Origin: Adineta vaga
Taxonomy: Eukaryota > Animalia > Rotifera
Reading direction: 5' to 3'
Assembly: GCA_021613535.1 (NCBI GenBank)
Contig: CP075497.1
Coordinates: 12,524,001 to 12,588,000, forward strand
Length of the DNA stretch: 64,000 bases
Shown: in pieces, positions 8,418 to 26,436 of the stretch
Position numbering within the stretch: position 1 is the stretch's first letter
Layout of the letters: the number at the start of each line of letters is the position of its first letter
Notes under the pieces: model-generated
Databases searched by the model: none
Seen by the model: the letters and a program-made list of their open reading frames with translations, nothing else
What the model was told of the DNA's origin: nothing
Position numbers and translations under genes: made by a program

Positions 8418-9238
8418 ATGAATTTATTTCAAGAAATGTTCATTATTCTTTTAAGTTTAGTTATAAAATCAAATGGAAATAATTCTCAAAGATCTTCTCG
8501 AGGTTTAATTTTCTTTCAAAAAAAAAACATCTCTATCTATTTGTTTATTAAAAAGGTGCATATGCATATTCATCAAATATCGAAATTCGTTGTTTTTCAT
8601 CTGATTCTTATGTAAAACTATCTAATGGATTAGAGAAATTAATTGGAAATCTTGAAATAGGTGATCAATTAATGACAATTAATGAAAATTCATTTGAAAT
8701 TCAATCAACTGAAATGATCCTTATGTTACATCAATCAACAAATCAAATAAGTAATTTTTATTGAAGAGAAAATAATTCATCTGATTTTCTTTTTGTGAAA
8801 GGTTTATTTTATAATTTAAAAACAAAATCAAATAATGAAATAAGTTTAACAGCGAATCATTTAATTCCAATACGACTTTCCAATAACAAAATTGAATTTA
8901 AATTAACAAAAGATATTGAAATAGGTGATTATTTAATAATAAATGAGAATGGAAAAGTAAAACATTCTCAAATAATTAATAAAACAATTCAAATTAAAAG
9001 AGGATTTTATGCTCCGTTAACAATGAGTGGAACATTATTAATTAATAATATTTATTCAAGTTCATTTGCAAATATTCAAAATCATTATTATGCACAATTT
9101 TATTTATTTCCTTTAAGATTTTATTATCAATTATCAAAGTATTTTTCTTTTCAACAAAATGAAACATTTTTTCAGTTTTTTATTCAGTTTAGTTTTGATT
9201 TTATTTATAAATATTTTCCAAATTTATTAATTGTTTAA
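8418..9238 (+). CDS. Secreted Hint/Hog-domain (hedgehog-related autoprocessing) protein with minimal N-terminal peptide; 3 exons
   Basis: Exons 8418-8502, 8556-8750, 8802-9238. Signal peptide MNLFQEMFIILLSLVIKSNG, then R|CFSSDSYVKL..IGNLEIGDQL, LTANH (TxxH), DIEIGDYL and GFYAPLTMSGTLLINNIYSSSFA, followed by a hydrophobic SRR-like tail. Confidence 0.88.
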
Positions 9239-11473: not shown

Positions 11474-13922
11474 CAGAGGGGTATTATCTCATTGAGGGTG
11501 TGCGGATGTTACGTACGAGGATTAACATGTTGAGAGCAAGGGTGTATGTGTGAATTCGAATATTTCTTGAGAATGTTGAGCAGGAGCTGGCGTAAATATG
11601 TTGCGGTCGTAAAAAAGCTTGCTATAGTAAAGTCGCGGAGTTAGCAGCACAAAGTACCGTCGAAAATTAAAAATTTCAATTGAAGCAAGAATTTTCAAGT
11701 TTCAAGTTCGACACTACTGAAATGAATATAAAATAAAGATGCGTGAATTGATTACTAAGGAAAAAGCGACAAAACAATGAAGAATTGAAAACCATCAAAA
11801 ACTTTTTCTCATGTTTTCAATTATGTTTTGTTTCATGTTCATTATTGCGTTTTCTCACTGTTAATCTTGAGTCGTTTTTTTTATCTACATCTTCTATGAT
11901 CAATAGTGAATTTTTTCTTTCTCATGCTCATTATTCTCATAGTTTTACTGTGATTGATAGTCACTTAAACATTTCTCTACGATCAATGTATGATTTTTTT
12001 CCTCTTACTAAGGTTTTATCTGGTGTTTTGTTAGAAAAGATAAATCTATTGTGCAAATAGTTCCTTTTTTTATCTAACATATTCATCATTGACATGATTA
12101 AATTGGTCTGTGATACTTGATCTGAGAATAAAACGTATTGATTAGATTTTCCGAATGTTTTTATTTATTCTTTTGAAATAGCAATAGATTTAACAGGAGT
12201 ACACGTTACTTGATTGTACGTGTGTGATCATGCTCAACGAATACTTTTGAATATGGAATAAAAAATAGTTTTTGTTATTCAACTGTGTCATTAGTAAGGA
12301 TTCGAAAATTATTAAGACACGGAATGAGAAAAACTGTATGAAGAAGAAAAAATTCTCTTAACTAACAACAGATGATACTTCATTGTATTTCTTTTGCTCA
12401 AGAATATTCAATACCAAATCCAAATGGATAAGTAAAAAATAAATCAATTGTACAAATAGATTTTCTCGGTAATTATTTTATTTTTACATTTAACTTTGTA
12501 AAATAAGAAATAGAAGTGAATGAATCAAAATGAAATGTCTATCGATTTATTTTTTCAATTCATGAAGTTTTCCATCACGTTTTTTCATCTTAATAAAAGC
12601 GAAAAAAATGTGTAGCTGTACAAATGTCATACAATTGTGTATTTTGTTTTTCTTTTTTACATATGAAATAAGATTAAATGTATTTAATAAGAAAAAAATC
12701 AAAAACGAAGAGTAACACAATTTTTAACTGAATCAAGAACATGATTTCGACCAAGATCAACAACATTTGAAAGTGGATGTACCTCATTATCTGTTGTTTT
12801 ATTAACTGTTTCTGTAGCTTTTTCAATATAATCATGTGCCATTTTAAAATCACCACGACGTTCATAAGCTAATCCAATATTATGTAATGTTCGAGTTAGA
12901 TCTGGATGATTACTTGGTAATGCTGCTGTTTGTATTTCTAATGCTTTTTTATAGTTTTCAATTGAAAGATCAAGTTCACCAAGACCAAAATAAATATTAG
13001 CAAGAGTTGCATAGACTGATGCATTATTGGGATGTGCTGGTGGAAGAGCACTTTGAAGAATTTTCTGAGCTTTTAGAGCATTGATTAATGCAGTATCATA
13101 CTAAAAGATAGAATAAAAACAATTCATGAATATGAACTAAATCTCTTAGAAATGAATCGATACTTTCTACGTACCTCTTTTCTATCATATTGAATTGTAC
13201 TTAGATTGATAAGAGTTCCCGCAACATCTATATGTTTTTTTCGAACACTTTTCCCATACAGCTTTAAAGAAGTTTGAAAAGATTCTAAAGCATCCTCTTG
13301 TCTATCCATAGCAGACTGAACAATTCCAATGCCATTCAAAGCTTTTGCTGCACTTGCTAATCGTTTTGGTTTAGCATAAGCATGTAAATCATAAGCACGT
13401 TGATAACAATCGAATGCTTCTTGTAAATTATTTCTTAAACGATGTGTTCGTCCAAAATTAAAATAAATACAAGCAATTTCTTCATCATTTGGTTTTGATG
13501 AATTAAGAATATTATCAAAATATTGACTTGCTTTTCCATATTCACCCATTTCAAGAAGTAAATGACCAAATAAAAGAACAACATTTGCATCCATCATTTT
13601 CTTCTTCTGATATTCCATATATTCAGCAGCTAACGCTGCTCCTTGATCAGTTGCTTGAACTGTGACATGATATAAATTATCAACTTCATCATAAGTACAT
13701 GAATCAATTCGAAATGAAGCACCTAAATAGAAATTAATTTCTTTTGAAAATTTTTCTAAAAGATAATTTTTCTTTACCAATATCAACAAGCATTTCAGCT
13801 TCTTCGGGAAACGCTGAATATTGTGCAATATCAGCGACAACAATATTTCTGACTTGAGTAATATCAACTTGATATTCGAAAAGACAACGTACAACTCCTG
13901 TTCGATTATTTGGTTTTGTAGC

Positions 13923-14251
13923 TGTTAATATGAAAAACATTGCATCAGTTCAATCATATGACACATGTCAAATGTTCATATGTTATCATGACTCATGATG
14001 TCAGATGTATATGATATCTTCTATCTCTTGCATCATGTAATCATGACGCATGATGACATGAGTCATGGAAACTGACCAGTATAAATACGCGTATGTATTT
14101 TCATATGGACGCCTACAAACACCTACGCCATCTGTTCTTATCTTCTCTCTTATCTCTCTTATCTTTCTCTTCCTACTTTCTTATTGTTATTATTTTCACC
14201 TTGTTAACGAATAAACAGAACTCACGAAGTTATACAACAAGAAAACTTACA
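13923..14251 (+). repeat. 5' LTR
   Basis: TGTTAATATG...AAAACTTACA, with TATAAA (~14080) and AATAAA (~14210). No difference from the 3' LTR seen by eye. Confidence 0.96.
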
Positions 14252-14253
14252 AT

Positions 14254-14263
14254 TGGCGACGAG
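14254..14263 (+). promoter_or_regulatory. Primer binding site, probably tRNA-Ser(GCU)
   Basis: TGGCGACGAG lies 2 nt after the 5' LTR and is complementary to the ...CUCGUCGCCA 3' end of metazoan tRNA-Ser(GCU). Confidence 0.8.
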
Positions 14264-14313
14264 ATATATTTTTTTTCAACAACTACGTTTATTCTGACAA
14301 GCAAATAATTACA

Positions 14314-15024
14314 ATGACAACAGCAGCAACGAATTTCTCAACAATTCCAGCACTTCACTCATTTGATCATCGAAACTCAACATGGCAATCATACCGGGAT
14401 AGAATTAACTTCTATTTCAGAGCCAACAAGATCGTTGACAATGACGATAAGAAAGCTTTATTCCTATGGTCAGTTGGTGATTCAACTTATGGTTTGTTAG
14501 AATCATTAATGGCACCTGCTCTCCTGACCGATGAATATGTTAAATTCGTTGATCTAATTAAAAAATTAGATTCACATTATGATGCAACAAGAAATATTAT
14601 GACAGCAACGTATGAATTTTATTCATGTCATCAAAAACCAGGTCAACCATTTTCCGAATGGAAAGCCGAACTTTGTGAAAAAATGCGTCATTGTGGTTTT
14701 AATTCATCAAAATTAAAAGATCGTCCTCAAGATCGTGCATTGCGAGATGCCTATGTTATTGGAGTGAACAATCCAAAAATAAGACAAGCTCTTCTCAAGG
14801 AAGAGGATCCTGATCTTGCTGCTGCTGAAAGAATTATACAAGTAGCAGAACGTCTTGAACAAGACGTCCGACAATTCAATACATCGAACAATACAAATCT
14901 TCCAATAGTGGCCAAGTTACAACAGAAGAAATCAACAAGTCAATATCCATCCCCGAATGGAAAATCATCTTCAGCAACCACATCTGATTCTTGCCAATCA
15001 TGTGGATCAACAGCATCCACGTAG
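14314..15024 (+). CDS. gag: Retrotransposon Gag (frameshifted within the first zinc knuckle)
   Basis: WQSYRDRINFYF..KKALFL..QKPGQPFSEW..LRDAYVIG. Ends CQSCGST. Confidence 0.9.
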   Translation: MTTAATNFSTIPALHSFDHRNSTWQSYRDRINFYFRANKIVDNDDKKALFLWSVGDSTYGLLESLMAPALLTDEYVKFVDLIKKLDSHYDATRNIMTATYEFYSCHQKPGQPFSEWKAELCEKMRHCGFNSSKLKDRPQDRALRDAYVIGVNNPKIRQALLKEEDPDLAAAERIIQVAERLEQDVRQFNTSNNTNLPIVAKLQQKKSTSQYPSPNGKSSSATTSDSCQSCGSTAST

Positions 15025-18000
15025 TGAATGCAAATATCGTACATTTACTTGTAATTTCTGCAAAAGAACTGGTCATTTGGAACGAGTATGTCAGAAGAAG
15101 AAGAATGGAAAGTATATACCAAAACAAAATTCAACCACGCACCAGTTGAAACGTGTGAAATGGAACAAATCCAACTCGACACAATTGTCAATGTCACTTC
15201 GGATAAATGGTCAAGATTTTACTCTTGATGTAGATACAGGTTCTGATCATACAATTATTAGTACAAATGATTGGAAACAACTTGGTTCACCAACAATTCG
15301 TACAACTTCATTGAAACTAGAATGTTATAGTGGTAAACAACTGGATATTCAAGGTGAATGTGATGTCCATGTACACTATAACAAACAAGTTTTCAATCTC
15401 ACAATGGTGGTAATCAAACGAACAGGAACACCGCTTCTTGGTCTTCGATGGATTTCATCAATGAAAATAGATTTGAATGGATTGCTTTATGGTACAAACG
15501 GCACAAGTCAACAGGTGAACAAGGTGTATAGTCAGGTGAAACTGAACGAGATCCTGAACAAGCACAAACAAGTATTCAACAAGGACTTAGGTCATTGTAC
15601 AAAAGTCAAAGCACATATACAACTGGTTCCCAATGCTGTACCGAAATTCTTCAAACCACGTCCTTTACCATTCGCATATTTAGATGGAGTGAAGGAAGAA
15701 ATACAAAGAAATGTAACAAATGGAATTTTGGAGAAAATTGACATTTCACAATGGGCAGCACCAATAGTTCCAGTTCGTAAACCTTCAGGAAAAATCCGCA
15801 TCTGCGGAGATTTCAAGGTAACCATCAATTCACAAATGCTCGTGGATCAACATCCTATACCACCAATTGATGAACTTCTTACCCGACTCAATAATGGTGA
15901 AAAATTTACAAAATTAGACTTGACAGATGCATATCTTCAAGTCGAACTCGATGACAGCAGCAAAGAATTGGTGGTTATAAACACACCATTGGGCCTGTTC
16001 AAGTACAATCGGATGCCTTTTGGCATCTCAAATGCGCCTGCGATCTTCCAGCGCATAGTTGATCAAGTTCTTGCTGGTGTGCCAAACAGTATAGCATACT
16101 TAGACGACATATTAATCACTGGAAAAGATGAAAAAGAACATTTGGAAACATTGGATTTGGTTTTGGCAAAACTGGCCGATTTTGGTCTTCGGTGTAACAT
16201 GGAAAAGTGTTCATTTTTCCAAGATGAAGTGGTCTATCTTGGTTATATAATCAATTCAAGTGGTAAACAACCCGATCCTACTCGAGTTGTAGCAATTAAA
16301 AATTTACCAACACCAACTGATGTGAAACAAGTTGAAGCTTTCATCGGAAAAATTAACTATTATGGGAAATTCATTGCAAATTTCTCGCATCTTTGTGCTC
16401 CATTGAATCGATTAAGACAAAACAATGTAAAATGGAAATGGGATAGTTCATGTCAAAAAGCTTTTGACACCTTAAAAAAGCAATTGGAAGAAACAACTAT
16501 GCTGGTGCACTTCGATCAAAAACTCCCATTAATTCTCGCAACAGATGCAAGCAGTTATGGAATTGGAGCTGTATTGATGCACAGATACGCCGATGGAACT
16601 GAAAAACCCATCGCACACGCATCGAAAACTCTCAATCCAGCTGAAAGAAATTACAGCCAGATAGAGAAAGAAGCACTTTCCATCGTATATGGAATAAGAA
16701 AATTCCACCAATATCTGGCAGCAAAGTCTTTCGAATTGGTAACTGATCATAGACCTTTACTGGCAATCTTTAATCCAGCAAAAGGTATATCAATAACAAC
16801 TGCAAATCGTCTTTCAAGATGGTCCATTGCATTGATGGGTTACAATTATACGATTAGATACAAACCTACACAACAACATGGTAATGCTGATGGTTTGTCA
16901 AGGTTACCTGCTGGTGAAGATAAATCATTTGTTGATGATGAATCCGTTCAAGTCAACCGAATTCAAGCTCAAGTTATTGAAGATGGTCCTGTTGATTCAA
17001 AGAAAATTCAAGCAGCTGTAGCTGCAGATGAACATCTTCATCTGATTAAAAATTTTTTATTGAATACATGGCCGAAATCAATGTCAAAGAAAAACAATCC
17101 TGATCTTTTTCCATATTTTACAATACGGAAATCATTATCAGTAGCACATGGATGTATCTTGAAGGATACACAAGTAGTCATACCAAAATCATTACGACAT
17201 CGTGTTATACAAATGATTCATCGTGGACATCTTGGTGTTATCAAAATGAAACAATTAGCACGTGTTCATTGCTGGTGGCCAAAGATGGAAATGGATATCG
17301 AAAACATGGCTAAGTCATGTAAAATATGTGCAGCAGCAGCACCTAAACCAAAAGAAGATTTCAAACCATGGCCAGAACCTGAACATAATTGGTCTCGTGT
17401 GCACATGGATTTTCTTGGACCTCTTTGGAACTCGAAATGGTTGGTAATGGTTGATGCAAAATCAAAATTTCCTTTTGTTGCAGATATGGGAAATGATACA
17501 AGTGCAAAGAATCTTTACAATGTACTCGAACAAGCCATCGATTGGTTAGGTCCACCGACAACATTGGTATCGGATAATGGACCACCATTTACCAGTTTCG
17601 AAATGAATGAATTTTATAACAAGTATGGAATACAAAGTATCACCACAGCACCGTACCATCCTCCTAGCAATGGAATTGCTGAAAGATTTGTTAGATCTTT
17701 CAAGGAAGGTATGATCAAGGAACAACAATCAGGTCAAACAAATAAATCAGTTGCATTACGAAATGTTTTACGAACCTATCGTTGGACACCTCATACAACA
17801 ACTGGTATTGCTCCAGCTGAAGCACTTTTTCAAAGACCAATTCGAACGGATCTTGCACGACTACATCCAAATTTAACAAAATCAAAACCAACACAAATAA
17901 GCAAATATGATCTTGAACAAGAAATTTGGGTGATGAACCACAAACAGAACAAAAAATTTGAATGGAAATCAGGAGTTATCAAGAAAAGAATAGGTTCAAT

Positions 18001-18226
18001 GATGTATCAAATTGAATTGCAAAATGGACACACTTGTGTGCGACATCAAAATCAACTTCGATTACGTCAAGAACCAGACAACCAATCAATTGATCTAGAT
18101 GCTTTACCAGATGATCTTTTGAACTACAACAACCCAACAACTTCTGATCAACAACAAGCACCTCAACAATCACCCCGTTACCCACGTCGGCAACGGCGAC
18201 CACCTGATCGTTATGCACCGTCGTAA
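14957..18226 (+). CDS. pol: Retrotransposon Pol (NC knuckle, protease, RT, RNase H, integrase)
   Basis: CNFCKRTGHLERVC knuckle; protease VDTGS; RT YLDD; RNase H TDAS..YSQIEKEAL..TDH; integrase HHCC (H-rg-H..CKIC), HMDF, SDNG, NGIAER. Confidence 0.96.
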   Translation: MENHLQQPHLILANHVDQQHPRSECKYRTFTCNFCKRTGHLERVCQKKKNGKYIPKQNSTTHQLKRVKWNKSNSTQLSMSLRINGQDFTLDVDTGSDHTIISTNDWKQLGSPTIRTTSLKLECYSGKQLDIQGECDVHVHYNKQVFNLTMVVIKRTGTPLLGLRWISSMKIDLNGLLYGTNGTSQQVNKVYSQVKLNEILNKHKQVFNKDLGHCTKVKAHIQLVPNAVPKFFKPRPLPFAYLDGVKEEIQRNVTNGILEKIDISQWAAPIVPVRKPSGKIRICGDFKVTINSQMLVDQHPIPPIDELLTRLNNGEKFTKLDLTDAYLQVELDDSSKELVVINTPLGLFKYNRMPFGISNAPAIFQRIVDQVLAGVPNSIAYLDDILITGKDEKEHLETLDLVLAKLADFGLRCNMEKCSFFQDEVVYLGYIINSSGKQPDPTRVVAIKNLPTPTDVKQVEAFIGKINYYGKFIANFSHLCAPLNRLRQNNVKWKWDSSCQKAFDTLKKQLEETTMLVHFDQKLPLILATDASSYGIGAVLMHRYADGTEKPIAHASKTLNPAERNYSQIEKEALSIVYGIRKFHQYLAAKSFELVTDHRPLLAIFNPAKGISITTANRLSRWSIALMGYNYTIRYKPTQQHGNADGLSRLPAGEDKSFVDDESVQVNRIQAQVIEDGPVDSKKIQAAVAADEHLHLIKNFLLNTWPKSMSKKNNPDLFPYFTIRKSLSVAHGCILKDTQVVIPKSLRHRVIQMIHRGHLGVIKMKQLARVHCWWPKMEMDIENMAKSCKICAAAAPKPKEDFKPWPEPEHNWSRVHMDFLGPLWNSKWLVMVDAKSKFPFVADMGNDTSAKNLYNVLEQAIDWLGPPTTLVSDNGPPFTSFEMNEFYNKYGIQSITTAPYHPPSNGIAERFVRSFKEGMIKEQQSGQTNKSVALRNVLRTYRWTPHTTTGIAPAEALFQRPIRTDLARLHPNLTKSKPTQISKYDLEQEIWVMNHKQNKKFEWKSGVIKKRIGSMMYQIELQNGHTCVRHQNQLRLRQEPDNQSIDLDALPDDLLNYNNPTTSDQQQAPQQSPRYPRRQRRPPDRYAPS

Positions 18227-18233
18227 CAATTTT

Positions 18234-18244
18234 AAAGGCAGAGG
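18234..18244 (+). promoter_or_regulatory. Polypurine tract
   Basis: AAAGGCAGAGG immediately before the 3' LTR. Confidence 0.75.
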
Positions 18245-18573
18245 TGTTAATATGAAAAACATTGCATCAGTTCAATCATATGACACATGTCAAATGTTCA
18301 TATGTTATCATGACTCATGATGTCAGATGTATATGATATCTTCTATCTCTTGCATCATGTAATCATGACGCATGATGACATGAGTCATGGAAACTGACCA
18401 GTATAAATACGCGTATGTATTTTCATATGGACGCCTACAAACACCTACGCCATCTGTTCTTATCTTCTCTCTTATCTCTCTTATCTTTCTCTTCCTACTT
18501 TCTTATTGTTATTATTTTCACCTTGTTAACGAATAAACAGAACTCACGAAGTTATACAACAAGAAAACTTACA
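18245..18573 (+). repeat. 3' LTR
   Basis: 329-bp direct repeat of 13923-14251. Confidence 0.96.
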
Positions 18574-20399
18574 GTAGCAAAACCATATGCTACGGCACGA
18601 TCATGACTTGTTGATAAATAACCATTTGTTGAAATTAATTGTCCAATATTTTTTTTGAAATTTTCAACTTCAGTTGGACTCAAACAAAGACCACGATAAA
18701 GTTTAATTAAATTCTTTCCTTTTGTTTTTAAATCCTCAAATTTTAAATCAAGTTGTTTACATAAATCAATAATATAAAAACGAAAATGATATAAAACATT
18801 GACATTTTCAGTACGTAATGCTTTGTTTATAAACCTTAATTATAGAAGAAAAAAAAACAATAAAATCATCTTAGAAAACCCGTTGTTTCCGCGCTATTCT
18901 CATTGAAAAGAACCTGAATCCTATTATTCCCTATTTTTTAACGACTACGTCACAGTTATGCGTAATTGCGCCATAGTTTTTCGCAACTATGGCGCATGTC
19001 TTTCGCATCGATGTCTTTCTTACCTATATAGAAAACATTCTTTTGTATACCATTGAATAGCTTCATCTGATTTATAAGTTAAATCAAATTCATTTATATT
19101 TGCTAATTCAACAAGATTTCCTCGATAATATTCCTTACATTTATCAACCATCATTTGTTTAGCTTCTTGTGTTTTCGGCATATTCATTAAAACTGATTTT
19201 AATAATTGAAAAAACATAAATGAACCAGATTCTTTACTTAAATCTCGTGTCGATTTTTCATTTTGATTATAAACACTAAATGCTGCTGTTTGTTTCGCAA
19301 GATCATTACGTACTGATTGAATTGTATTTAAAAGACTTTCTGGATTTTCACATCGAGTTATTACACGACTATTTTGTACTTGATCTGTTTCATTTGCACT
19401 TTTATTAAATGAAGATGAATAAACAATAACTGAATCAACATTTGTAAGCGTATTAAGAGATTCAAGAAGAGTTTGCGATGGAGGATTTTCAAGAATAAGA
19501 AAAATTTTCTTATCTGACATGGATTTTATACGATCAACACAATCTTCTTCTGTTTGAACTAACTTAAAATAAAATCAATTTTCAATAGACTTTTGTCATT
19601 CGAAATAAACAAACCTGAATTTCATTATTATTAATTGCTTTGAGAACATCAAGAACTGTTTTTTTTGGTGATTCATATGATAGATAAACAATGTATACAT
19701 CATCATCGCTAATTGTTTGTTGTTCTGTTCCAGGTGATCGTTGATCTTCTCCTCTTTTGCTTTTTTCTTTTCCATTAACATCATCTTGTTTATGATGACG
19801 CCATTTAATGAAAGGCATTTTTATAAAATGAAGAAAATCTCACGTTCTATTTTGCTTTTATTTTTATATCTATCGTTCTGCATCACTGAATCATAATCAA
19901 TGCCTCAATCATTTTCATCATTCTGACTGATTGTATTTTTTTATGTTATTATGATAAAAAACCTTTGTATATTGATTATTTTGGGTATTTTTTATGGGAA
20001 AAAATATTTCATTTCTAATAATTCAATTTTTTTAATGAAAAATATCGATCAAAATAAAAGTACAAAAGATGCCACGTCGAATTAAAGTTTCATTGAAGAA
20101 AAAGAGGAATAGATCCTAATTGCATACTGAACATTCATTATTCATTCATCGTCAAGTTTATAAATAATTCTTTTTTCGTTTAAGAATGAAAAATAATATT
20201 CGAACAAGTTTTCGATCATCAAAAAGAAATTAAGAAAAATAATCTGATTTCAAAGTATTTTTCAATATCGATTAATATCCTTTAAGAAAAATGTAATTAA
20301 TCAAAGTTCAAATGAACAAGATCAAAATCGAATAAAAGCCTTAATGATTTCCATCGAGTAATACAAAAATTTTCGTTTTTTTTTCTTAGAAAAAAATCT

Positions 20400-21320
20400 A
20401 GTCGTCGAAAAGTTTGTTGTGGATGGTCTTGACCTTGTATTCTTTTAACATTACATGGAATTCTTTTTTTTGTCACAGCTATTGCTGTAACTTTGATCAC
20501 TCTTTTAACTGCTAACAGATCAAGTATAACAACACAAACATCATCCACTTTTTCCATAACAAGCGAAATATCAACAACTTTATCAATATGTAATTCTCTA
20601 TGCGGTCATAATACAACAGTTGCAAATGTGTCTTTTTTTTGCTCGTTTGAATTTTGAAAATGATTTTATTGCTTCAATGTTAACTTACAATGGAACATCA
20701 TCAAATGGACCAACATTTATCGTCGATTATATTTGACAAGCAGTTTCGTTAAATTCAGGATTAGATCAATACCTTTCAATCTTAGTTATACCAATAAATC
20801 CAAAGAGTTTTCCGAATATCAAAGGAATTCATACAATAACTGGTTTATGTCCACGACAATCTCAACAAGAATGTTTTCAATTTGGTCTTCGTTTCGACTA
20901 ATACAACAAGTTTAAGAGGAAAAGGTTATTTTGGTCTATGGGAAGCAGCTGATCTTAGTGATACTTTACCTATTCGTATAAATGAATGGACATATATTGC
21001 TATTGTTTATTCTAAAAGTAAATCAAAACAAATACTTTATGTTAATGGAATACTTGATAATTCTCGAATACCATCAAGTGGTTTTAATCAAACATCAAGA
21101 ACATTTTACACTAGATAATCGATTTCTTTCGTTTTTTCAAGGTTTATATTGATCAATTAATAATAAGTAATGGAATAAGATCATCATGTGAAATTTAAAA
21201 TGTTGCAACAATGACTTGTCGATTTTCTTGCTGATTCAGGTCCAAACGATGTTTTAGTTAATGCTTTTAATTATAATTCAACAGATGGATTAAAAGGAAG
21301 ACAAGCAACTGGTCTTCGAT
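20400..21320 (+). pseudogene. Degenerate type II membrane protein with a LamG/concanavalin-like domain
   Basis: RRKVCCGWS*PCILLTLHGILFFVTAIAVTLITLL (TM with in-frame TGA), a Ser/Thr-rich stalk, further stops and frameshifts, then the LamG-like motif NEWTYIAIVYS..QILYVNGILD..GYIDQL. Confidence 0.55.
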
Positions 21321-21717
21321 TATATATTGCGAAATATTGATGAATAGAAAGTTTGTTCGAGAGAACTTGTTTTGGATAATATTTGTGCCATTTTTACAAA
21401 TTAACTTTTTGTACAAAGGGCAAATTTTGTAACCAATGAAGCGATATACGAGAATGAAATAATATAAAATTCTTTGTATATTTAATATAAAAAAAACGAT
21501 TTTCGTTTATTTCAAAATAACATTTTTTCTTTCTTTACATACGACATCAACTATCTATAAATAACAACCATTTATTTATATTCATCCAATCGCATTCGAT
21601 AATTTTGTCCCATCAATTAATCCAGTCATCCATATAAATGTATAATTTTCCTCCCATTCAAACGTATCAATTATAATTCAGATGTCAAAAGGTAAAATAT
21701 CATATCAATAAATCCTC

Positions 21718-24141
21718 ATGTTTCCCTTACCATTACTAACAACTAAACCAACAAAAGTCTTAGAATGTGATGAAAATACACCTGATTCACATGTTTCACG
21801 AGATTCACGATTAATTCGTTTAACAGGAATTCATCCATTTAATTGTGAAGCACCATTAAAACTTTTATATGATCATGGTTTTCTTACACCAACAGAATTA
21901 TGGTTTGTTCGTAATCATGGAGCTGTACCTAAAGTATTAGATGAAGAGATTTTCAATTGGACAATTCATATTGAAGGAATGGTTGAAAATCCGATGTCAT
22001 TGACATTGAATGATCTTTTAAAATTTCCTCAAATAACAATTCCAATCACAATGGTCTGTGCAGGAAATCGACGTAAAGAACAAAATATAATTCGAAAAGG
22101 ACATGGATTTAATTGGGGAAGTGGAGCAGTAAGTACAGCTTTATTTACTGGAATATTAATGAATGAAATTCTCAAAGTAATAAAACCAACCGACGAAGCA
22201 AAATACATGTGGATGGAAGGTATTGATCAACTTCCAAATGGTCATTATGGAACAAGTATTCGTTTATCAACTGCAATGAATCCTTCAATGTGTGTTATGT
22301 TAGCTTATAAAATGAATGGAGAATTATTAAGAGCAGATCATGGACGTCCTCTTCGGATGATTATTCCAGGACATATCGGTGGAAGAAGTGTGAAATGGTT
22401 AAAAAGAATCATTCTTTCTGATAAACCAAATGACAATTGGTATCATATATTTGATAATAGAGTTTTACCAACGATGATAACACCAGAAATGATTGAACAT
22501 GATAAATCTTGGTATTATGATGAACGATATGCGATTTATAATCTTAATATTCAAAGTGTTATTTGTTATCCAAATCATGATGAAAGAATTGAAATTGAAG
22601 AAGAAAAATTTTATAATATTCGAGGTTATGCTTATAATGGAGGTGGAATACGTGTTGGAAGAGTTGAAATTTCTCTCGATCAAGGTTATACTTGGAAATT
22701 AACAACTATTAATTATCCAGAAGACCTTTATAGACAAAGTAAAAGTAATGAAGAACTTTTTGGAGGAAAATTAGATATGTCAAAAAGAGAAAATTGTTTT
22801 TGTTGGTGTTTTTGGAATATTGAAATTTCAATTAAAGAACTTTCACAAGCAAAAGATATTGTTGTTCGAGCAATGGATGAATATATGAATATTCAACCAA
22901 GAGATATTTATTGGAATATTCTTTCAATGTTAAATAATTGTTGGCATAGATTAACAATTATTCAGGATATAAATACAAATGATTTACTATTTCAACATCC
23001 AACTGTACCTGGAGTAACAAAAGGAGGATGGATGGAATCTATTAAAGATCAAAGTGGAAATCTTACGGATGGATTTTGGGGTTTAAGAAATATGAATTCA
23101 TTATCATTAGAAAATAAATCATTCGATAATGTGAAAATGACAAATGATTCAATAACACAATTGATTACAGAAGAAGAATTAGCGAAACATAATAAAGATA
23201 ATGATGTATGGATTGCAATCAATGGACAAGTTTACGATGTTTCGGAATATTTAAAAGATCATCCTGGGGGAAGAAATTCAATTCTAGTAACCAGTGGTAT
23301 GGATGCATCGGAAGATTTCTTAGCTATTCATAGTAATCATGCGAAATCAATGTTAATTAAATATCATATTGGAATACTTGAAAAACAAATAAATATTCAC
23401 CAAGAAATATTTCTCTCACAAAATCAATGGAAAAAAACGATTTTAAAAACGAAGAAAATTCTTAATCATGATACAATTCTATTAACTTTCCTATTAGAAC
23501 ATCCAAAACAAGTTCTAGGCGTACACATTGGAAAACATTTATTTGTTCGATGTACAACTCAATCAAAGGAAAAAGTTATTCGAGCATATACACCAATTTC
23601 AAATCCAAATCAATTGGGACAATTTGATTTACTTATTAAATTATATCGAAAAACACAAACACGATCAGCTGGGAAAATGTCTGCGTGTATTGATTTACTT
23701 AAAGAAGGTGATACAATTGAATGTAAAGGACCATTTGGAGATTTTGAATATCTTAAGAACGGAATTGTTTCAATTAATGGAATTCAAAGAAAATTTGATA
23801 AATTGACAATGATTGCTGGTGGAAGTGGAATAACGGGTATTTATCAAATATTTCAATCTGTTTATCAAGATGGAATTCAATGTAATTTGATTTATTTTAA
23901 TAAAATAGAAGAAGATATTCTTTTACGTGATGAATTAACATCTTTAAAACAAATTCAATATTCACTTTCATATCCAAAAACAAATTGGAATGGTTTACAT
24001 GGAGATATTTCTAAAGAACATCTACAAGATGTTCATCAAGGTCTATTACTTTGTTGTGGACCGCCAGAAATGATGGATGAAGTTTATCGAATTGCATCTG
24101 ATCTTGGATGGAATGTTAAAGATCAATTTATTCGTTTTTAA
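21718..24141 (+). CDS. niaD: Eukaryotic assimilatory nitrate reductase [NAD(P)H], fungal NiaD-like, intronless
   Basis: Moco domain RLTGIHPFNCE, FVRNHG, CAGNRRKE, DHGRPLR, GGRSVKWL; dimerisation domain RGYAYNGGG, CFCWCFW, NNCW; cytochrome b5 VYDVSEYLKDHPGG..FLAIHS; FAD RAYTP, GKMS; NAD(P) IAGGSGIT, CGPPEM. Single 807-aa ORF. Confidence 0.95.
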   Translation: MFPLPLLTTKPTKVLECDENTPDSHVSRDSRLIRLTGIHPFNCEAPLKLLYDHGFLTPTELWFVRNHGAVPKVLDEEIFNWTIHIEGMVENPMSLTLNDLLKFPQITIPITMVCAGNRRKEQNIIRKGHGFNWGSGAVSTALFTGILMNEILKVIKPTDEAKYMWMEGIDQLPNGHYGTSIRLSTAMNPSMCVMLAYKMNGELLRADHGRPLRMIIPGHIGGRSVKWLKRIILSDKPNDNWYHIFDNRVLPTMITPEMIEHDKSWYYDERYAIYNLNIQSVICYPNHDERIEIEEEKFYNIRGYAYNGGGIRVGRVEISLDQGYTWKLTTINYPEDLYRQSKSNEELFGGKLDMSKRENCFCWCFWNIEISIKELSQAKDIVVRAMDEYMNIQPRDIYWNILSMLNNCWHRLTIIQDINTNDLLFQHPTVPGVTKGGWMESIKDQSGNLTDGFWGLRNMNSLSLENKSFDNVKMTNDSITQLITEEELAKHNKDNDVWIAINGQVYDVSEYLKDHPGGRNSILVTSGMDASEDFLAIHSNHAKSMLIKYHIGILEKQINIHQEIFLSQNQWKKTILKTKKILNHDTILLTFLLEHPKQVLGVHIGKHLFVRCTTQSKEKVIRAYTPISNPNQLGQFDLLIKLYRKTQTRSAGKMSACIDLLKEGDTIECKGPFGDFEYLKNGIVSINGIQRKFDKLTMIAGGSGITGIYQIFQSVYQDGIQCNLIYFNKIEEDILLRDELTSLKQIQYSLSYPKTNWNGLHGDISKEHLQDVHQGLLLCCGPPEMMDEVYRIASDLGWNVKDQFIRF

Positions 24142-24484
24142 AACATTTATGAACATAAGACATTAGCGCCATCTACATTTAATCTTATTATGAAATATTG
24201 TAAACATAAATTGTCTGATGAAGAAGAAAATCTCTTTTTTTTCTATCAAAGTTATTTAAGAAAAATATTTTCATTAGAAAAAGAAGCTCATTTTGATTAG
24301 TTAAAATATTTATCAAGTAGGAAAATTCTTTGGAAATATCTTTGTTTAGTAACAGATGTAATTTAGTCAGTCTGATCATTCATAGAAATATTTCGTTTTA
24401 AAAATAGTACGAAAAAACAATCTTGATAAATCTTATACGAATATTTTATCAAGATTTCATCTTCGAATTTTTTGTATATAAATT

Positions 24485-25004
24485 ATGTAAGTCTTATTTA
24501 TATTTAAATATATTCAATTATTGATTTTCTTTTTTTTTTAAAATAGGAAACGACATCATGAAGACAATCCTTATTCATCAACTGATAGTGGTGGTGGAAA
24601 TGTTACAACACATTCAATACCAAAACGAATGGCAATAAGAACTGATTTACAAACAAAGTAAGTTTTATTTTCTTTTAAATAAACAAAATAATTTGTATAA
24701 TTTTATGAATAGTTATTCTCCATCAGAAAATTATTCTCCACCAAGTTCAACTGAATCAGATTCTTCATCATCTTCATCAATAAATTCATCGAATCCATTG
24801 AATTTAATTCATTCACAATTATGTATATGTCCTAATCAAGATTGTGTTATTCATGATCGTCAACGTTTAATGAATATTCCAACAGAATTAACTCATACAT
24901 TAAATCCAACTTATGGAAATAAAAATCTTCTACTCTATTATGCACATTTGGAACGATGTCGTCGACATGGATTAACTCTTCATCAGAATTCTTCTTCATC
25001 TTAA
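24485..25004 (+). CDS. FAM104/VCF1-like small nuclear protein; 3 exons, start codon split by an intron
   Basis: AT|gtaagt...aaatag|G gives MKRHHEDNP..PKR... Ser-rich TESDSSSSSSINS and the C-terminal helix YGNKNLLLYYAHLERCRRHG resemble FAM104 (SSSSINS; Y..IN..L..AHF..L..RG). Confidence 0.62.
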
Positions 25005-25131
25005 CTTTTATTTCTTGTTTTTCTTTGTATTAGCGCATGCTAAACATATACATAGTTCTATACATAAATATATATATTCACTTCTGAACAAAACGAAATC
25101 GAGATTCATTCTTTTTAATTCTAGATTAAAT

Positions 25132-26341
25132 ATGACAACACCTACAACACCATTCGCAACACCGGGTGAACCATTTGGTAATGATGATGGAGTCATTTCT
25201 TCAAGAAAATTAGACACCATCTGCTTATTTGATGTTGATGGAACGATAGCTTTAGCACGACAGGTAATTGTGGAAAATAGATTAAGTTCTGTAATGATTT
25301 TCGTTTTTTCAAGCTAATTACAGTAGAAATGGATACTTGTCTTCAAGAAGTTCGAAAGAAATGTCTGATTGGTCTTGTAGGTGGATCAGACATTGTTAAA
25401 ATTGTTGAACAAATCGGTGGAACAAATGGTTTGTTTTGTTTTAATGAAATTTCTTTTCTGAAGAAAATCTTTCGTTTTAGCTATAGCAAAATATGATTAT
25501 GTATTTGCAGAAAATGGTCTTGTTGCTTATAAAAATGGCAACCTATTTTTTCAAGAAGTTTGTTGATTTAATTTTGAAAAATGAAAAATCTTCTTTTTTT
25601 TCTTTCCTTAGAATATTCAAAAACATGTTGGTGAAGATGATTTACAATCATTGATTAATTATTGTTTAAAATATTTATCGGAAATTAAATTACCATTTAA
25701 AAGGTTTTCTTTTTTCTTTTCAAAATACGAATCTTTTCTTTTTTTCAGAGGTACATTCATTGAATTTCGTAATGGTCTTATAAATGTTTCACCTGTTGGA
25801 AGAAATTGTACAAAAGAAGAACGAGATATATTCGAAGCCTATGATTTAGTAAGATTGTTCTTTTCGAAAGATTTTAGTTTCTAGTTTTTATTCTATAGGA
25901 ACATAAAATTCGTGAAACAATGGTAAAAGATTTACAAGGAAAATTTGCTCATTTAAATTTAGTTTTTGCAATTGGTAAAACTTTTTTTTCTGAAATTTTA
26001 TTGTTTTGTTTTTATTCTAGGTGGACAAATAAGTTTTGATGTCTTTCCTGAAGGATGGGATAAACGATATGCAGTTAAACATTTAGAAAAAGATAATGTG
26101 AAGAATATTTATTTCTTCGGTGATAAAACATTTAAGGTAAGAATGCATTTTATTATTTTTGAGAAAGAAAACGAGTTCGTATCATTTTGAAATCAAAGAG
26201 TTCATGAAAACGAGTTCTTTTGTGTAGGGTGGCAATGATTATGAGATTTATAATGATCCACGAACGAAAGGTTATTCGGTAACAAATCCGGTGGAAACTC
26301 GTGCTTATTTATGTGAATTATTTGGATTAGAAAAAGTTTAG
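25132..26341 (+). CDS. PMM2: Eukaryotic phosphomannomutase (HAD IIB), multi-exon
   Basis: [70 protein letters not shown]. Confidence 0.95.
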
Positions 26342-26436
26342 ATTTCCAGTATTTATTTAATCCTTTTTAAAAAAAACAATTTTATTTCTAAATTAAAAAG
26401 AAAGACACAAAAAAATACGATTCGAATAAAAGAAAT

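What the first reader, a model, noticed from the sequence alone, without database searches (positions are those of the whole stretch)
21718..24141. Complete fungal-type assimilatory nitrate reductase embedded in an animal chromosome
Seen: an uninterrupted, intronless 807-aa ORF with all five eukaryotic NR modules and key residues (Moco-ligating Cys in CAGNRRKE, both heme His, RAYTP, CGPP). Its codon usage matches the AT-rich host, and it lies a few hundred bp from intron-rich animal genes (FAM104-like, PMM, PRPF31). Known: this enzyme is typical of plants, algae, fungi and oomycetes, and animals do not normally assimilate nitrate. Inferred: an ameliorated horizontal acquisition, probably fungal, giving the animal nitrate-to-nitrite activity. 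No nitrite reductase or nitrate transporter is in the window, so possible roles include NOS-independent nitrite/NO production or an NAD(P)H electron sink under hypoxia or desiccation, rather than nitrogen nutrition. The usual GGTGITP reads GGSGITG here.
Basis: partly seen in the sequence, partly recalled or inferred. Interest (0 to 1): 0.88.

Follow-up and report, generated by a model that had tools for sequence, protein, structure and literature searches.

The report
Fungal nitrate reductase in a rotifer
A bdelloid rotifer chromosome carries an intact, transcribed gene for the fungal/plant-type enzyme that turns nitrate into nitrite. It was acquired long ago from an ascomycete-type fungus, probably together with a nitrate importer, so these animals may reduce nitrate themselves.

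Summary
Window 21718..24141 (+) is an uninterrupted 807-aa ORF with all five eukaryotic nitrate reductase (NR) domains and every catalytic and cofactor residue checked.

The host is a bdelloid rotifer, Adineta vaga by all indications. The gene lies in a block collinear with A. ricciae on both sides. One DNA contig links it to the spliced neighbour PMM at even depth. Its GC3 (12%) matches host genes. Unspliced RNA contigs cover it in runs from three studies.

Eight rotifer orthologues read as DNA are all intact and intronless (dN/dS 0.13-0.43). Trees place the rotifer clade inside Dikarya on the ascomycete side (99.9/100). Fungal monophyly without rotifers is rejected (AU p=0.005). The subphylum of the donor is unresolved.

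New here: bdelloids also carry a fungal-type NRT2 nitrate transporter, on another A. vaga chromosome. An earlier scan note on other DNA of this genome had flagged it. In two rotifer-like environmental contigs NRT2 sits directly upstream of NR, as in the Saitoella cluster, which suggests one co-transfer. No nitrite reductase is linked; its absence from the whole genome is untested.

Enzyme activity and physiological role remain inferred. No paper in the searched library describes this gene.

The parts
21718..24141 (+). Nitrate reductase coding sequence, 807 aa, intronless, stop codon included
   Evidence: ORF list; Pfam five domains; 2bih E 1.6e-174
21684..24224 (+). Minimum transcribed span seen in RNA contigs, with no splice joint inside
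   Evidence: Run X1 contigs cover 21684-22145, 22207-23906 and 23907-24224; X11 covers 21967-24150; X5 covers 23332-24205. Depth is zero at 20700-21654 in these runs
21916..22443 (+). Molybdopterin-binding domain (aa 67-242), with Mo-ligand Cys114 and Arg118/Arg119. Substrate-site Arg65 lies just upstream, at nt 21910-21912
22525..22962 (+). Moco dimerisation domain (aa 270-415), with Leu402 and Met404 of the NR-type substrate pocket. NR-type Asn247 lies between the two Moco-half domains, at nt 22456-22458
23167..23379 (+). Cytochrome b5 haem domain (aa 484-554), haem ligands His515 and His538
23440..23751 (+). FAD-binding domain (aa 575-678), motifs RAYTP 622 and GKMS 652
23809..24084 (+). 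NAD(P)H-binding domain (aa 698-789), motifs GGSGITG 701 and CGPP 780. This is the fastest-evolving part in the A. vaga/A. ricciae pair
22146..22206 (+). Two haplotypes (L152F, T158K, D159K plus synonymous changes), both present in DNA and in RNA contigs
   Evidence: DNA run X9 word depth 63 against 78. Both forms appear in RNA runs X1 and X11
24436..26400 (+). Context only, not part of the NR gene
   Evidence: Ten GT..AG joints in RNA contigs. DNA contig X9 record 24 spans 22207-26400 and so links NR to them. The order is the same in A. ricciae
12806..19770 (-). Upstream host gene (ADP-ribosyltransferase/TPR family), collinear with A. ricciae but split by a 4.65-kb LTR retroelement at 13924-18569. 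Context only
   Evidence: tblastx collinearity; Pfam on the ORFs; the A. ricciae gene table

Best explanation
This is a functional eukaryotic assimilatory-type NAD(P)H:nitrate reductase (EUKNR) gene of ascomycete-type fungal origin. It has been a resident gene of bdelloid rotifers since before Adineta and Rotaria diverged. Expected mechanism (inferred): a homodimer passes electrons from NAD(P)H to FAD, then to haem b5, then to the molybdenum cofactor, which reduces nitrate to nitrite in the cytosol. The animal already makes the molybdenum cofactor for sulfite oxidase. Nitrate is most likely supplied by a co-acquired fungal-type NRT2 transporter. The two genes probably arrived together as the nrt2-euknr part of a fungal nitrate-assimilation cluster and were later separated in Adineta. 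What happens to the nitrite is not settled. My preferred reading (about 45%) is conversion to NO and onward N-oxide metabolism, or a reductant sink under hypoxia. True assimilation through a nitrite reductase not yet found is about 30%.
For: Shown:
- All five domains are intact.
- NR-type catalytic residues are conserved in the window and across 15 rotifer sequences: Arg65, Cys114, Arg118/119, Asn247, Met404, His515, His538, RxYTP, GKMS, GGSGIT and CGPP.
- Where wild-type sulfite oxidase has Tyr322, Arg450 and Val452, the window has Asn247, Leu402 and Met404. Engineered sulfite oxidase chains carrying Asn/Met at those places outrank wild type as hits.
- The Moco half aligns end to end with Pichia NR 2bih.
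- RNA contigs from three studies cover the whole ORF unspliced, while the neighbours show GT..AG joints.
- A DNA contig links NR to PMM at the same depth, and both haplotypes are present.
- A. vaga and A. ricciae are collinear for about 19 kb on both sides.
- GC3 equals that of host genes.
- Eight rotifer orthologues are intact and intronless, with dN/dS 0.13-0.43 overall and 0.17 for the Moco+dimer part.
- The rotifer clade has 100/100 support inside Dikarya, and the split that puts it with ascomycete-type NRs has 99.9/100. Fungal monophyly excluding rotifers is rejected (AU p=0.005).
- NRT2 is present in A. vaga, A. steineri, Rotaria and Didymodactylos, with Taphrinomycotina as nearest fungi.
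- NRT2 then NR, same strand and about 1.1 kb apart, occurs in L006 and L013, mirroring Saitoella.

From the literature: all eukaryotic Mo enzymes, NR included, can reduce nitrite to NO (PMC10637980).
Against: - No enzyme activity has been measured.
- RNA word depth over NR is 5-9 against 77-320 for the neighbours in the same runs. The tool warns that contig depth is a poor measure.
- The reductase half evolves faster in the A. vaga/A. ricciae pair: FAD+NAD dN/dS is 0.55 (0.37-0.81), and the NAD domain alone is 0.93 (0.49-1.84), so neutrality cannot be excluded there. The NAD(P)H motif ends in Gly instead of Pro.
- No nitrite reductase lies in the window or in any NR or NRT2 locus read, so a complete assimilation pathway is not shown.
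- The NR and NRT2 trees do not place rotifers beside exactly the same fungi.
- The environmental contigs that carry the cluster have 45% GC and come from an unidentified organism.
Confidence: 0.85

Rival explanations
1. The protein is kept for something other than nitrate reduction. Candidates are a nitrite-to-NO synthase, an electron donor (diaphorase module) to a partner such as an ARC/mARC-type enzyme as in Chlamydomonas, or a general NAD(P)H oxidoreductase.
For: NR and other Mo enzymes reduce nitrite to NO, and Chlamydomonas NR donates electrons to ARC (PMC10637980). No NiR is linked. Earlier scan notes, unchecked here, report P450nor and flavohemoglobin genes in this genome.
Against: The nitrate-pocket residues (Arg65, Arg118/119, Asn247, Met404) are strictly kept. 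The Moco half is the most constrained part. A dedicated nitrate/nitrite transporter is co-retained. NO formation by NR needs nitrite, which NR itself makes, so this rival largely extends the main reading.
Confidence: 0.15
2. The gene is a transcribed relic. It is drifting towards loss in A. vaga and no longer makes a working holoenzyme.
For: RNA contig depth is low. NAD-domain dN/dS is about 0.9 in the A. vaga/A. ricciae pair, and the motif has Pro to Gly. 12 of the 29 strain or allele differences seen are non-synonymous.
Against: All eight rotifer genes read as DNA have intact 800-878-aa ORFs. Whole-gene dN/dS is 0.13-0.43, and the FAD+NAD confidence interval excludes 1. Every cofactor motif and the C-terminal aromatic residue are kept. 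Both haplotypes are transcribed.
Confidence: 0.07
3. The gene is a contaminant or an assembly chimera: fungal DNA wrongly joined to rotifer sequence.
For: The ORF is intronless and its best non-rotifer hits are fungal.
Against: The contig is 13.9 Mb. A DNA contig spans NR to PMM at the same depth of about 121, and two haplotypes have depths of 63 and 78. Independent A. ricciae assemblies show the same gene order. GC3 is 12%, as in host genes. Orthologues occur in Adineta and Rotaria assemblies.
Confidence: 0.01
4. The gene was inherited vertically from an early opisthokont ancestor and lost in nearly all other animals. A variant: the donor was not a fungus.
For: Some holozoans (ichthyosporeans) have nitrate-assimilation genes (PMC6400420).
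Against: The rotifer clade is nested inside Dikarya on the ascomycete side (100/100 and 99.9/100; 99*). The AU test rejects fungi-without-rotifers (p=0.005). NRT2 tells the same story. Only bdelloid names appear among animal hits.
Confidence: 0.02

Closest known systems
Ascomycete NADPH:nitrate reductase, e.g. Ogataea (Pichia) angusta YNR1 (PDB 2bih) and Aspergillus NiaD
   Same: It has the same five-domain order and the same catalytic and cofactor residues. The Moco half aligns end to end with 2bih (E 1.6e-174), and the protein is 47-50% identical over its full length to many Pezizomycotina NRs.
   Different: It is encoded in an animal chromosome with host codon usage (GC3 12%). It lacks about 40-70 N-terminal residues. 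The NAD(P)H motif ends GITG instead of GITP. The stem branch is long, 0.46-0.62 substitutions per site. Pyridine-nucleotide preference is unknown.
Fungal high-affinity nitrate assimilation cluster (fHANT-AC: nrt2, euknr, NAD(P)H-nir; Slot and Hibbett 2007, PMC2040219), as seen here in Saitoella coloradoensis
   Same: In rotifer-like contigs L006 and L013, NRT2 lies directly upstream of NR on the same strand, with the same order and orientation as in Saitoella.
   Different: The nitrite reductase, which is the third member in Saitoella and Taphrina, is absent from every rotifer locus read. In A. vaga the two genes are on different chromosomes.
Animal sulfite oxidase (same Mo-enzyme family, native to animals)
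   Same: It shares the Moco and dimerisation folds and the Cys ligand (chicken sulfite oxidase hits, best E 8e-66).
   Different: Sulfite oxidase has Tyr322, Arg450 and Val452 where the window has Asn247, Leu402 and Met404. Sulfite oxidase also has an N-terminal b5 domain and no FAD/NAD(P)H module.
Ichthyosporean putative nitrate reductase CS-pNR and nitrate-assimilation clusters in animal relatives (Ocana-Pallares et al. 2019, PMC6400420)
   Same: Both are nitrate-assimilation genes gained by transfer in a phagotroph-related holozoan lineage.
   Different: CS-pNR fuses the EUKNR N-terminal half to a NiR C-terminal part. The rotifer gene is a canonical EUKNR. That survey reported the pathway as restricted to autotrophs and fungal-like osmotrophs, and its text nowhere mentions rotifers.
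Other foreign metabolic genes of bdelloid rotifers (Gladyshev 2008; Boschetti 2012, PMC3499245)
   Same: It shows the general pattern of an expressed, ameliorated non-metazoan gene embedded among metazoan genes.
   Different: This gene is not mentioned in the main text or held supplements of Boschetti 2012, nor in any paper found. Here a two-gene fungal cluster fragment appears to have moved together.

Membership tests
Eukaryotic assimilatory nitrate reductase (EUKNR) | Domain order: Moco, dimerisation, cytochrome b5, FAD, NAD(P)H | tested here: met
   All five Pfam domains are in order and above their cut-offs
Eukaryotic assimilatory nitrate reductase (EUKNR) | Mo-ligand Cys and the two substrate-site Arg residues (Pichia Cys139, Arg89, Arg144; residue names recalled from Fischer et al. 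2005, a paper I could not obtain) | tested here: met
   Cys114, Arg65 and Arg119 align with those residues of 2bih. They are conserved in 14-15 of 15 rotifer sequences
Eukaryotic assimilatory nitrate reductase (EUKNR) | NR-type rather than sulfite-oxidase-type pocket (Asn for Tyr322, no Arg at 450, Met for Val452) | tested here: met
   The window has Asn247, Leu402 and Met404. Wild-type-like sulfite oxidase chain 2a9d shows Y, R and V at these places, and engineered 3r19 shows N, M and M
Eukaryotic assimilatory nitrate reductase (EUKNR) | Haem b5 His pair; FAD RxY(T/S) and GxxS/T motifs; NAD(P)H GGxGxxP and CGPP motifs | tested here: met
   His515, His538, RAYTP, GKMS and CGPP are present. The GGSGITG motif has Gly in place of the final Pro, and this position varies among rotifers
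Eukaryotic assimilatory nitrate reductase (EUKNR) | NAD(P)H-dependent reduction of nitrate to nitrite | not testable with these tools
   This needs an enzyme assay
Sulfite oxidase | Tyr322/Arg450 sulfite pocket and an N-terminal b5 domain without a flavin module | tested here: not met
Fungal nitrate assimilation gene cluster (fHANT-AC) | nrt2 next to euknr | tested here: inconclusive
   Not met in the window or in A. vaga, where the genes are on different chromosomes. Met in rotifer-like contigs L006 and L013
Fungal nitrate assimilation gene cluster (fHANT-AC) | NAD(P)H nitrite reductase in the cluster or in the genome | tested here: not met
   tblastn with the Saitoella NiR finds nothing in the window or in 8 rotifer or rotifer-like loci. 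L013 and L014 were fetched afterwards, and their gene tables list no NiR-type domain. The rest of the genome could not be searched. No scan note mentions nitrite
Horizontally acquired gene resident in the host genome | Nested within the donor group in a supported tree, with the alternative rejected | tested here: met
Horizontally acquired gene resident in the host genome | Physical linkage to host genes, host-like depth and composition, conserved synteny, transcription | tested here: met

The most novel reading that the evidence does not exclude
Bdelloid rotifers took up a fungal nitrate cluster fragment (nrt2 plus euknr) in a single event. They now run an animal-encoded nitrate pathway. One version is nitrate import, then nitrite, then NO, then N2O or recycling, using the foreign P450nor and flavohemoglobin genes that earlier scan notes report in this genome. 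The other version is true nitrate assimilation. Either would be a first for Metazoa, and the transfer would be a rare eukaryote-to-animal move of linked pathway genes.
Probability: 0.3. Interest if true: 0.85.

Novelty: new member of a known kind. Interest (0 to 1): 0.65.

Why it matters
Animals are held to lack assimilatory nitrate reductase. [quoted passage not shown]

Here a phagotrophic animal lineage has kept both the nitrate importer and the reductase, intact and under purifying selection, across bdelloid diversification. That makes animal-encoded nitrate reduction directly testable. Open questions are whether it serves nitrogen nutrition, NOS-independent NO production, or redox balance in hypoxic or drying water films.

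It also offers a likely case of two neighbouring fungal pathway genes entering an animal genome together. This bears on how bdelloids acquire foreign DNA.

Tried and rejected
- The careful PMSF tree did not finish on one CPU. I used the quick PMSF tree plus an LG+F+G4 tree with UFBoot and aLRT, and a 33-row tree that includes Taphrina.
- A possible upstream exon (ATG near 21682, GT at 21692, a tactaac branch site, AG near 21757) is rejected. RNA contig X1 runs unspliced from 21684 to 22145.
- The 234-aa NAD_binding_1 gene upstream of the A. steineri NR is not an NR fragment: tblastn with the A. vaga NR does not hit it.
- Naming the 50%-cluster representatives mostly failed because many are unnamed metagenome proteins. 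Outgroups are therefore partly anonymous.
- The AU test could not separate rotifers+Pezizomycotina (p 0.53), rotifers+Saccharomycotina (p 0.09) and rotifers outside all ascomycete-type NRs (p 0.19).
- Fischer et al. 2005 and Qiu et al. 2012 could not be fetched. Pichia residue names are therefore from memory, backed by the alignments.
- Literature searches for bdelloid or rotifer NR, NiR, nitrate assimilation or P450nor found nothing relevant.
- NADH versus NADPH preference was not assigned.
Full report
**Observation**

Window 21718..24141 (+) is a single 807-codon ORF. Pfam finds, in order, Oxidored_molyb (67-242), Mo-co_dimer (270-415), Cyt-b5 (484-554), FAD_binding_6 (575-678) and NAD_binding_1 (698-789), all far above their cut-offs. 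The best solved structure is the Pichia angusta nitrate reductase Moco fragment 2bih, E 1.6e-174, aligned over residues 3-455. The quoted motifs are at the stated places.

**Is it a nitrate reductase rather than a sulfite oxidase?**

- Arg65, Cys114, Arg118/119, Asn247 and Met404 align with the active-site residues of 2bih.
- Wild-type-like chicken sulfite oxidase (2a9d) has Tyr, Arg and Val where the window has Asn247, Leu402 and Met404.
- The engineered chains 3r19 and 3r18, which carry Asn and Met at those places, score above wild type.
- The haem ligands (His515, His538), the FAD motifs (RAYTP, GKMS), the NAD(P)H motifs (GGSGIT, CGPP) and the C-terminal aromatic residue are kept.
- GGSGITP is the normal fungal form of the motif. 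Only the last Pro is replaced, by Gly or Ala in 9 of 15 rotifer sequences.

**Host and residence**

The identical protein sits on a 13.9-Mb contig. The next best hits are Adineta ricciae (77%), A. steineri (67-68%) and Rotaria (61-63%), followed by Pezizomycotina at 47-50%. An earlier follow-up note names the genome as Adineta vaga.

In A. ricciae the gene order is NR, a small gene, PMM, RAI1 (minus strand), PRPF31, the same as in the window. tblastx shows collinearity from about 12.8 to 31.6 kb on both sides of NR.

Reads were laid on window:20700-26400:
- Run X9 behaves as DNA. Its depth is even at about 121, and one contig spans 22207-26400, from inside NR into PMM.
- Runs X1, X5 and X11 come from three studies and behave as RNA. 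They show ten GT..AG joints of 45-91 nt in the two downstream genes and no depth at 20700-21654.
- Those RNA runs cover NR from 21684 to 24224 without any joint.
- Two haplotypes at 22146-22206 appear in DNA (word depth 63 and 78) and in RNA.
- NR word depth is 5-9 against 77-320 for the neighbours. This suggests low expression, though the tool warns against ranking genes by contig depth.

GC3 of NR is 12.3%, against 9.8-15.1% for RAI1 and PRPF31 exons. Contamination and chimerism are effectively excluded.

**Conservation**

Eight rotifer or rotifer-like NR genes read as DNA are intact, intronless ORFs of 800-878 codons. Pairwise NG86 dN/dS is 0.13-0.43.

Within the A. vaga/A. ricciae pair:

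| Region | dN/dS | 95% interval |
|---|---|---|
| Moco + dimer half | 0.17 | 0.12-0.25 |
| FAD + NAD half | 0.55 | 0.37-0.81 |
| NAD domain alone | 0.93 | 0.49-1.84 |

So the reductase half is relaxed in this branch. In other pairs the NAD domain is constrained, at 0.17-0.27.

**Origin**

A search of 1.84 billion cluster representatives gave 760 relatives at E<=1e-30. Selected representatives were named through their cluster members. A second homologue search identified P0123 as Saccharomycotina and supplied yeast, Taphrinomycotina and Pezizomycetes NRs.

Three trees were built: FastTree with 101 rows, IQ-TREE LG+C20 PMSF quick with 59 rows, and LG+F+G4 with UFBoot. They agree on these points:
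- The 15 rotifer-type sequences form one clade (100/100) on a long stem of 0.46-0.62.
- That clade lies inside the Dikarya clade (100/100).
- It falls on the ascomycete side of the split from Basidiomycota plus outgroups (99.9/100; 99* under PMSF).
- Its position among Pezizomycotina, Saccharomycotina and Taphrinomycotina is unresolved (support 44-58).

Adding a Taphrina NR recovered from locus L011 did not resolve the position.

AU tests:

| Constraint | p-AU | Outcome |
|---|---|---|
| Dikarya fungi monophyletic without rotifers | 0.005 | rejected |
| Rotifers + Pezizomycotina | 0.53 | not rejected |
| Rotifers outside all ascomycete-type NRs | 0.19 | not rejected |
| Rotifers + Saccharomycotina | 0.09 | not rejected |

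The constrained searches used the fast option, so these p-values are approximate.

**A transporter partner and a cluster**

The locus of environmental homologue P0013 (L006, a 361-kb contig) has a 512-aa MFS gene 1.1 kb upstream of NR on the same strand. That gene passes the NarK/NRT2 model, at 366 bits against a cut-off of 311.7.

Its homologues include named proteins of A. vaga (I4U23_015979, on a 20.35-Mb contig and so another chromosome, among GPCR and CCDC171 genes), A. steineri, three Rotaria species and Didymodactylos. The nearest fungi are Taphrina (53%), Saitoella (51%), Protomyces and Savitreella, ahead of Pezizomycotina at 42-48%.

In the NRT2 tree the split {rotifers + Taphrina/Protomyces/Savitreella clade} against {Saitoella, chytrids, Pezizomycotina, Saccharomycotina, Bifiguratus} has 99.5/100 support.

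Cluster layouts seen:
- Saitoella has NiR (minus strand), then NRT2 (plus), then NR (plus).
- Taphrina has NiR and NR on the minus strand and NRT2 on the plus strand.
- A second environmental contig, L013, repeats NRT2, then NR, then a Rieske/PaO oxygenase. Its proteins are 79-84% identical to those of L006.

The NR of L006 nests among named bdelloids, although both contigs have 45-46% GC. The simplest reading is a single transfer of a linked nrt2-euknr pair, later dispersed in Adineta. This is inferred, and the two gene trees are not fully concordant.

**Nitrite reductase**

tblastn with the Saitoella NiR found nothing in the window or in the eight rotifer or rotifer-like loci then in hand. 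The gene tables of L013 and L014, fetched later, list no NiR-type domain. None of about 4140 scan notes on this genome contains the word nitrite. The rest of the genome could not be searched here, so absence is not shown.

**Mechanism and role**

The electron path from NAD(P)H to FAD to haem to Moco to nitrate follows from family knowledge plus the conserved residues. It is not measured. Two routes are possible for the nitrite:
- Further reduction to NO by NR or other Mo enzymes. This is a general property of eukaryotic Mo enzymes (PMC10637980). Onward metabolism would use the foreign P450nor and flavohemoglobin genes that earlier notes report in this genome. I did not test those notes.
- Assimilation through an unfound NiR.

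I favour the first route, at about 45% against about 30%.

**Comparison with what is known**

The enzyme is a canonical ascomycete-type EUKNR; what is new is the host. Public databases auto-name the A. ricciae, A. steineri and Rotaria proteins as nitrate reductase. No paper in the searched library discusses a rotifer NR or NRT2. The main survey of the pathway reports it only in autotrophs and osmotrophs. I class the finding as a new member of a known kind.

**Limits**

- One read-laying run of 5701 letters was used, as the operators advised.
- The LTR retroelement in the window was only described.

Noticed in passing
window 13924-18569 (gag-like ORF 14314-15024, pol ORF 14957-18226, + strand): A Ty3/gypsy-type LTR retroelement has an intact 1089-aa pol ORF (protease, RT, RNase H, integrase). 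It sits as a 4.65-kb insertion inside the ADP-ribosyltransferase/TPR gene, which is uninterrupted in A. ricciae. Its GC3 (27%) is higher than that of host genes.
   Followed up: partly
L006:13182-14480 and L013:15527-17077: A Rieske/PaO-type (pheophorbide-a-oxygenase-like) oxygenase gene lies directly downstream of NR on the same strand in both environmental rotifer-like contigs. The two copies are 84% identical. It is absent from the window. It may be another foreign gene; its function and any link to nitrate are unknown.
   Followed up: partly
L006 and L013 (ENA ERZ26165376): These contigs have 45-46% GC against 28-36% for the named bdelloid loci, yet their NR nests among Adineta and Rotaria. 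The source organism is unidentified.
   Followed up: no
L005:2013-4934 and L005:7225-7929 (A. steineri): The A. steineri NR lies in a different neighbourhood, next to a 973-aa urea-transporter/ankyrin fusion gene and a 234-aa NAD_binding_1 gene that is not an NR fragment. In the trees A. steineri NR groups weakly with Rotaria rather than with A. vaga/A. ricciae. This may reflect old paralogy or ohnologue sorting.
   Followed up: partly
P0315 and P0445 (Bifiguratus adelaidae, Mucoromycota): Both its NR and its adjacent NRT2 (locus tags BZG36_03815/6) group with ascomycete yeasts rather than with early-diverging fungi. This hints at a separate fungus-to-fungus transfer of the cluster.
   Followed up: no
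window 20800-21340: The stretch upstream of NR reads like broken coding fragments of a lectin/LamG-like domain (for example WTYIAIVY...YVNG) interrupted by stops. It has no RNA coverage in the runs laid.
   Followed up: no
window 21682-21711: A 9-codon upstream ORF (ATG at 21682, TAA at 21709) ends 6 nt before the NR start codon. The longest RNA contig begins at 21684, 3 nt after an AG preceded by a pyrimidine-rich run. No spliced-leader sequence was seen.
   Followed up: partly
window 8418-9238 and the flanks of the window: Other scan notes nearby: a Hedgehog-type autoprocessing domain at 8418-9238, and a candidate four-gene operon 3.8 kb before the window start. I did not examine either.
   Followed up: no
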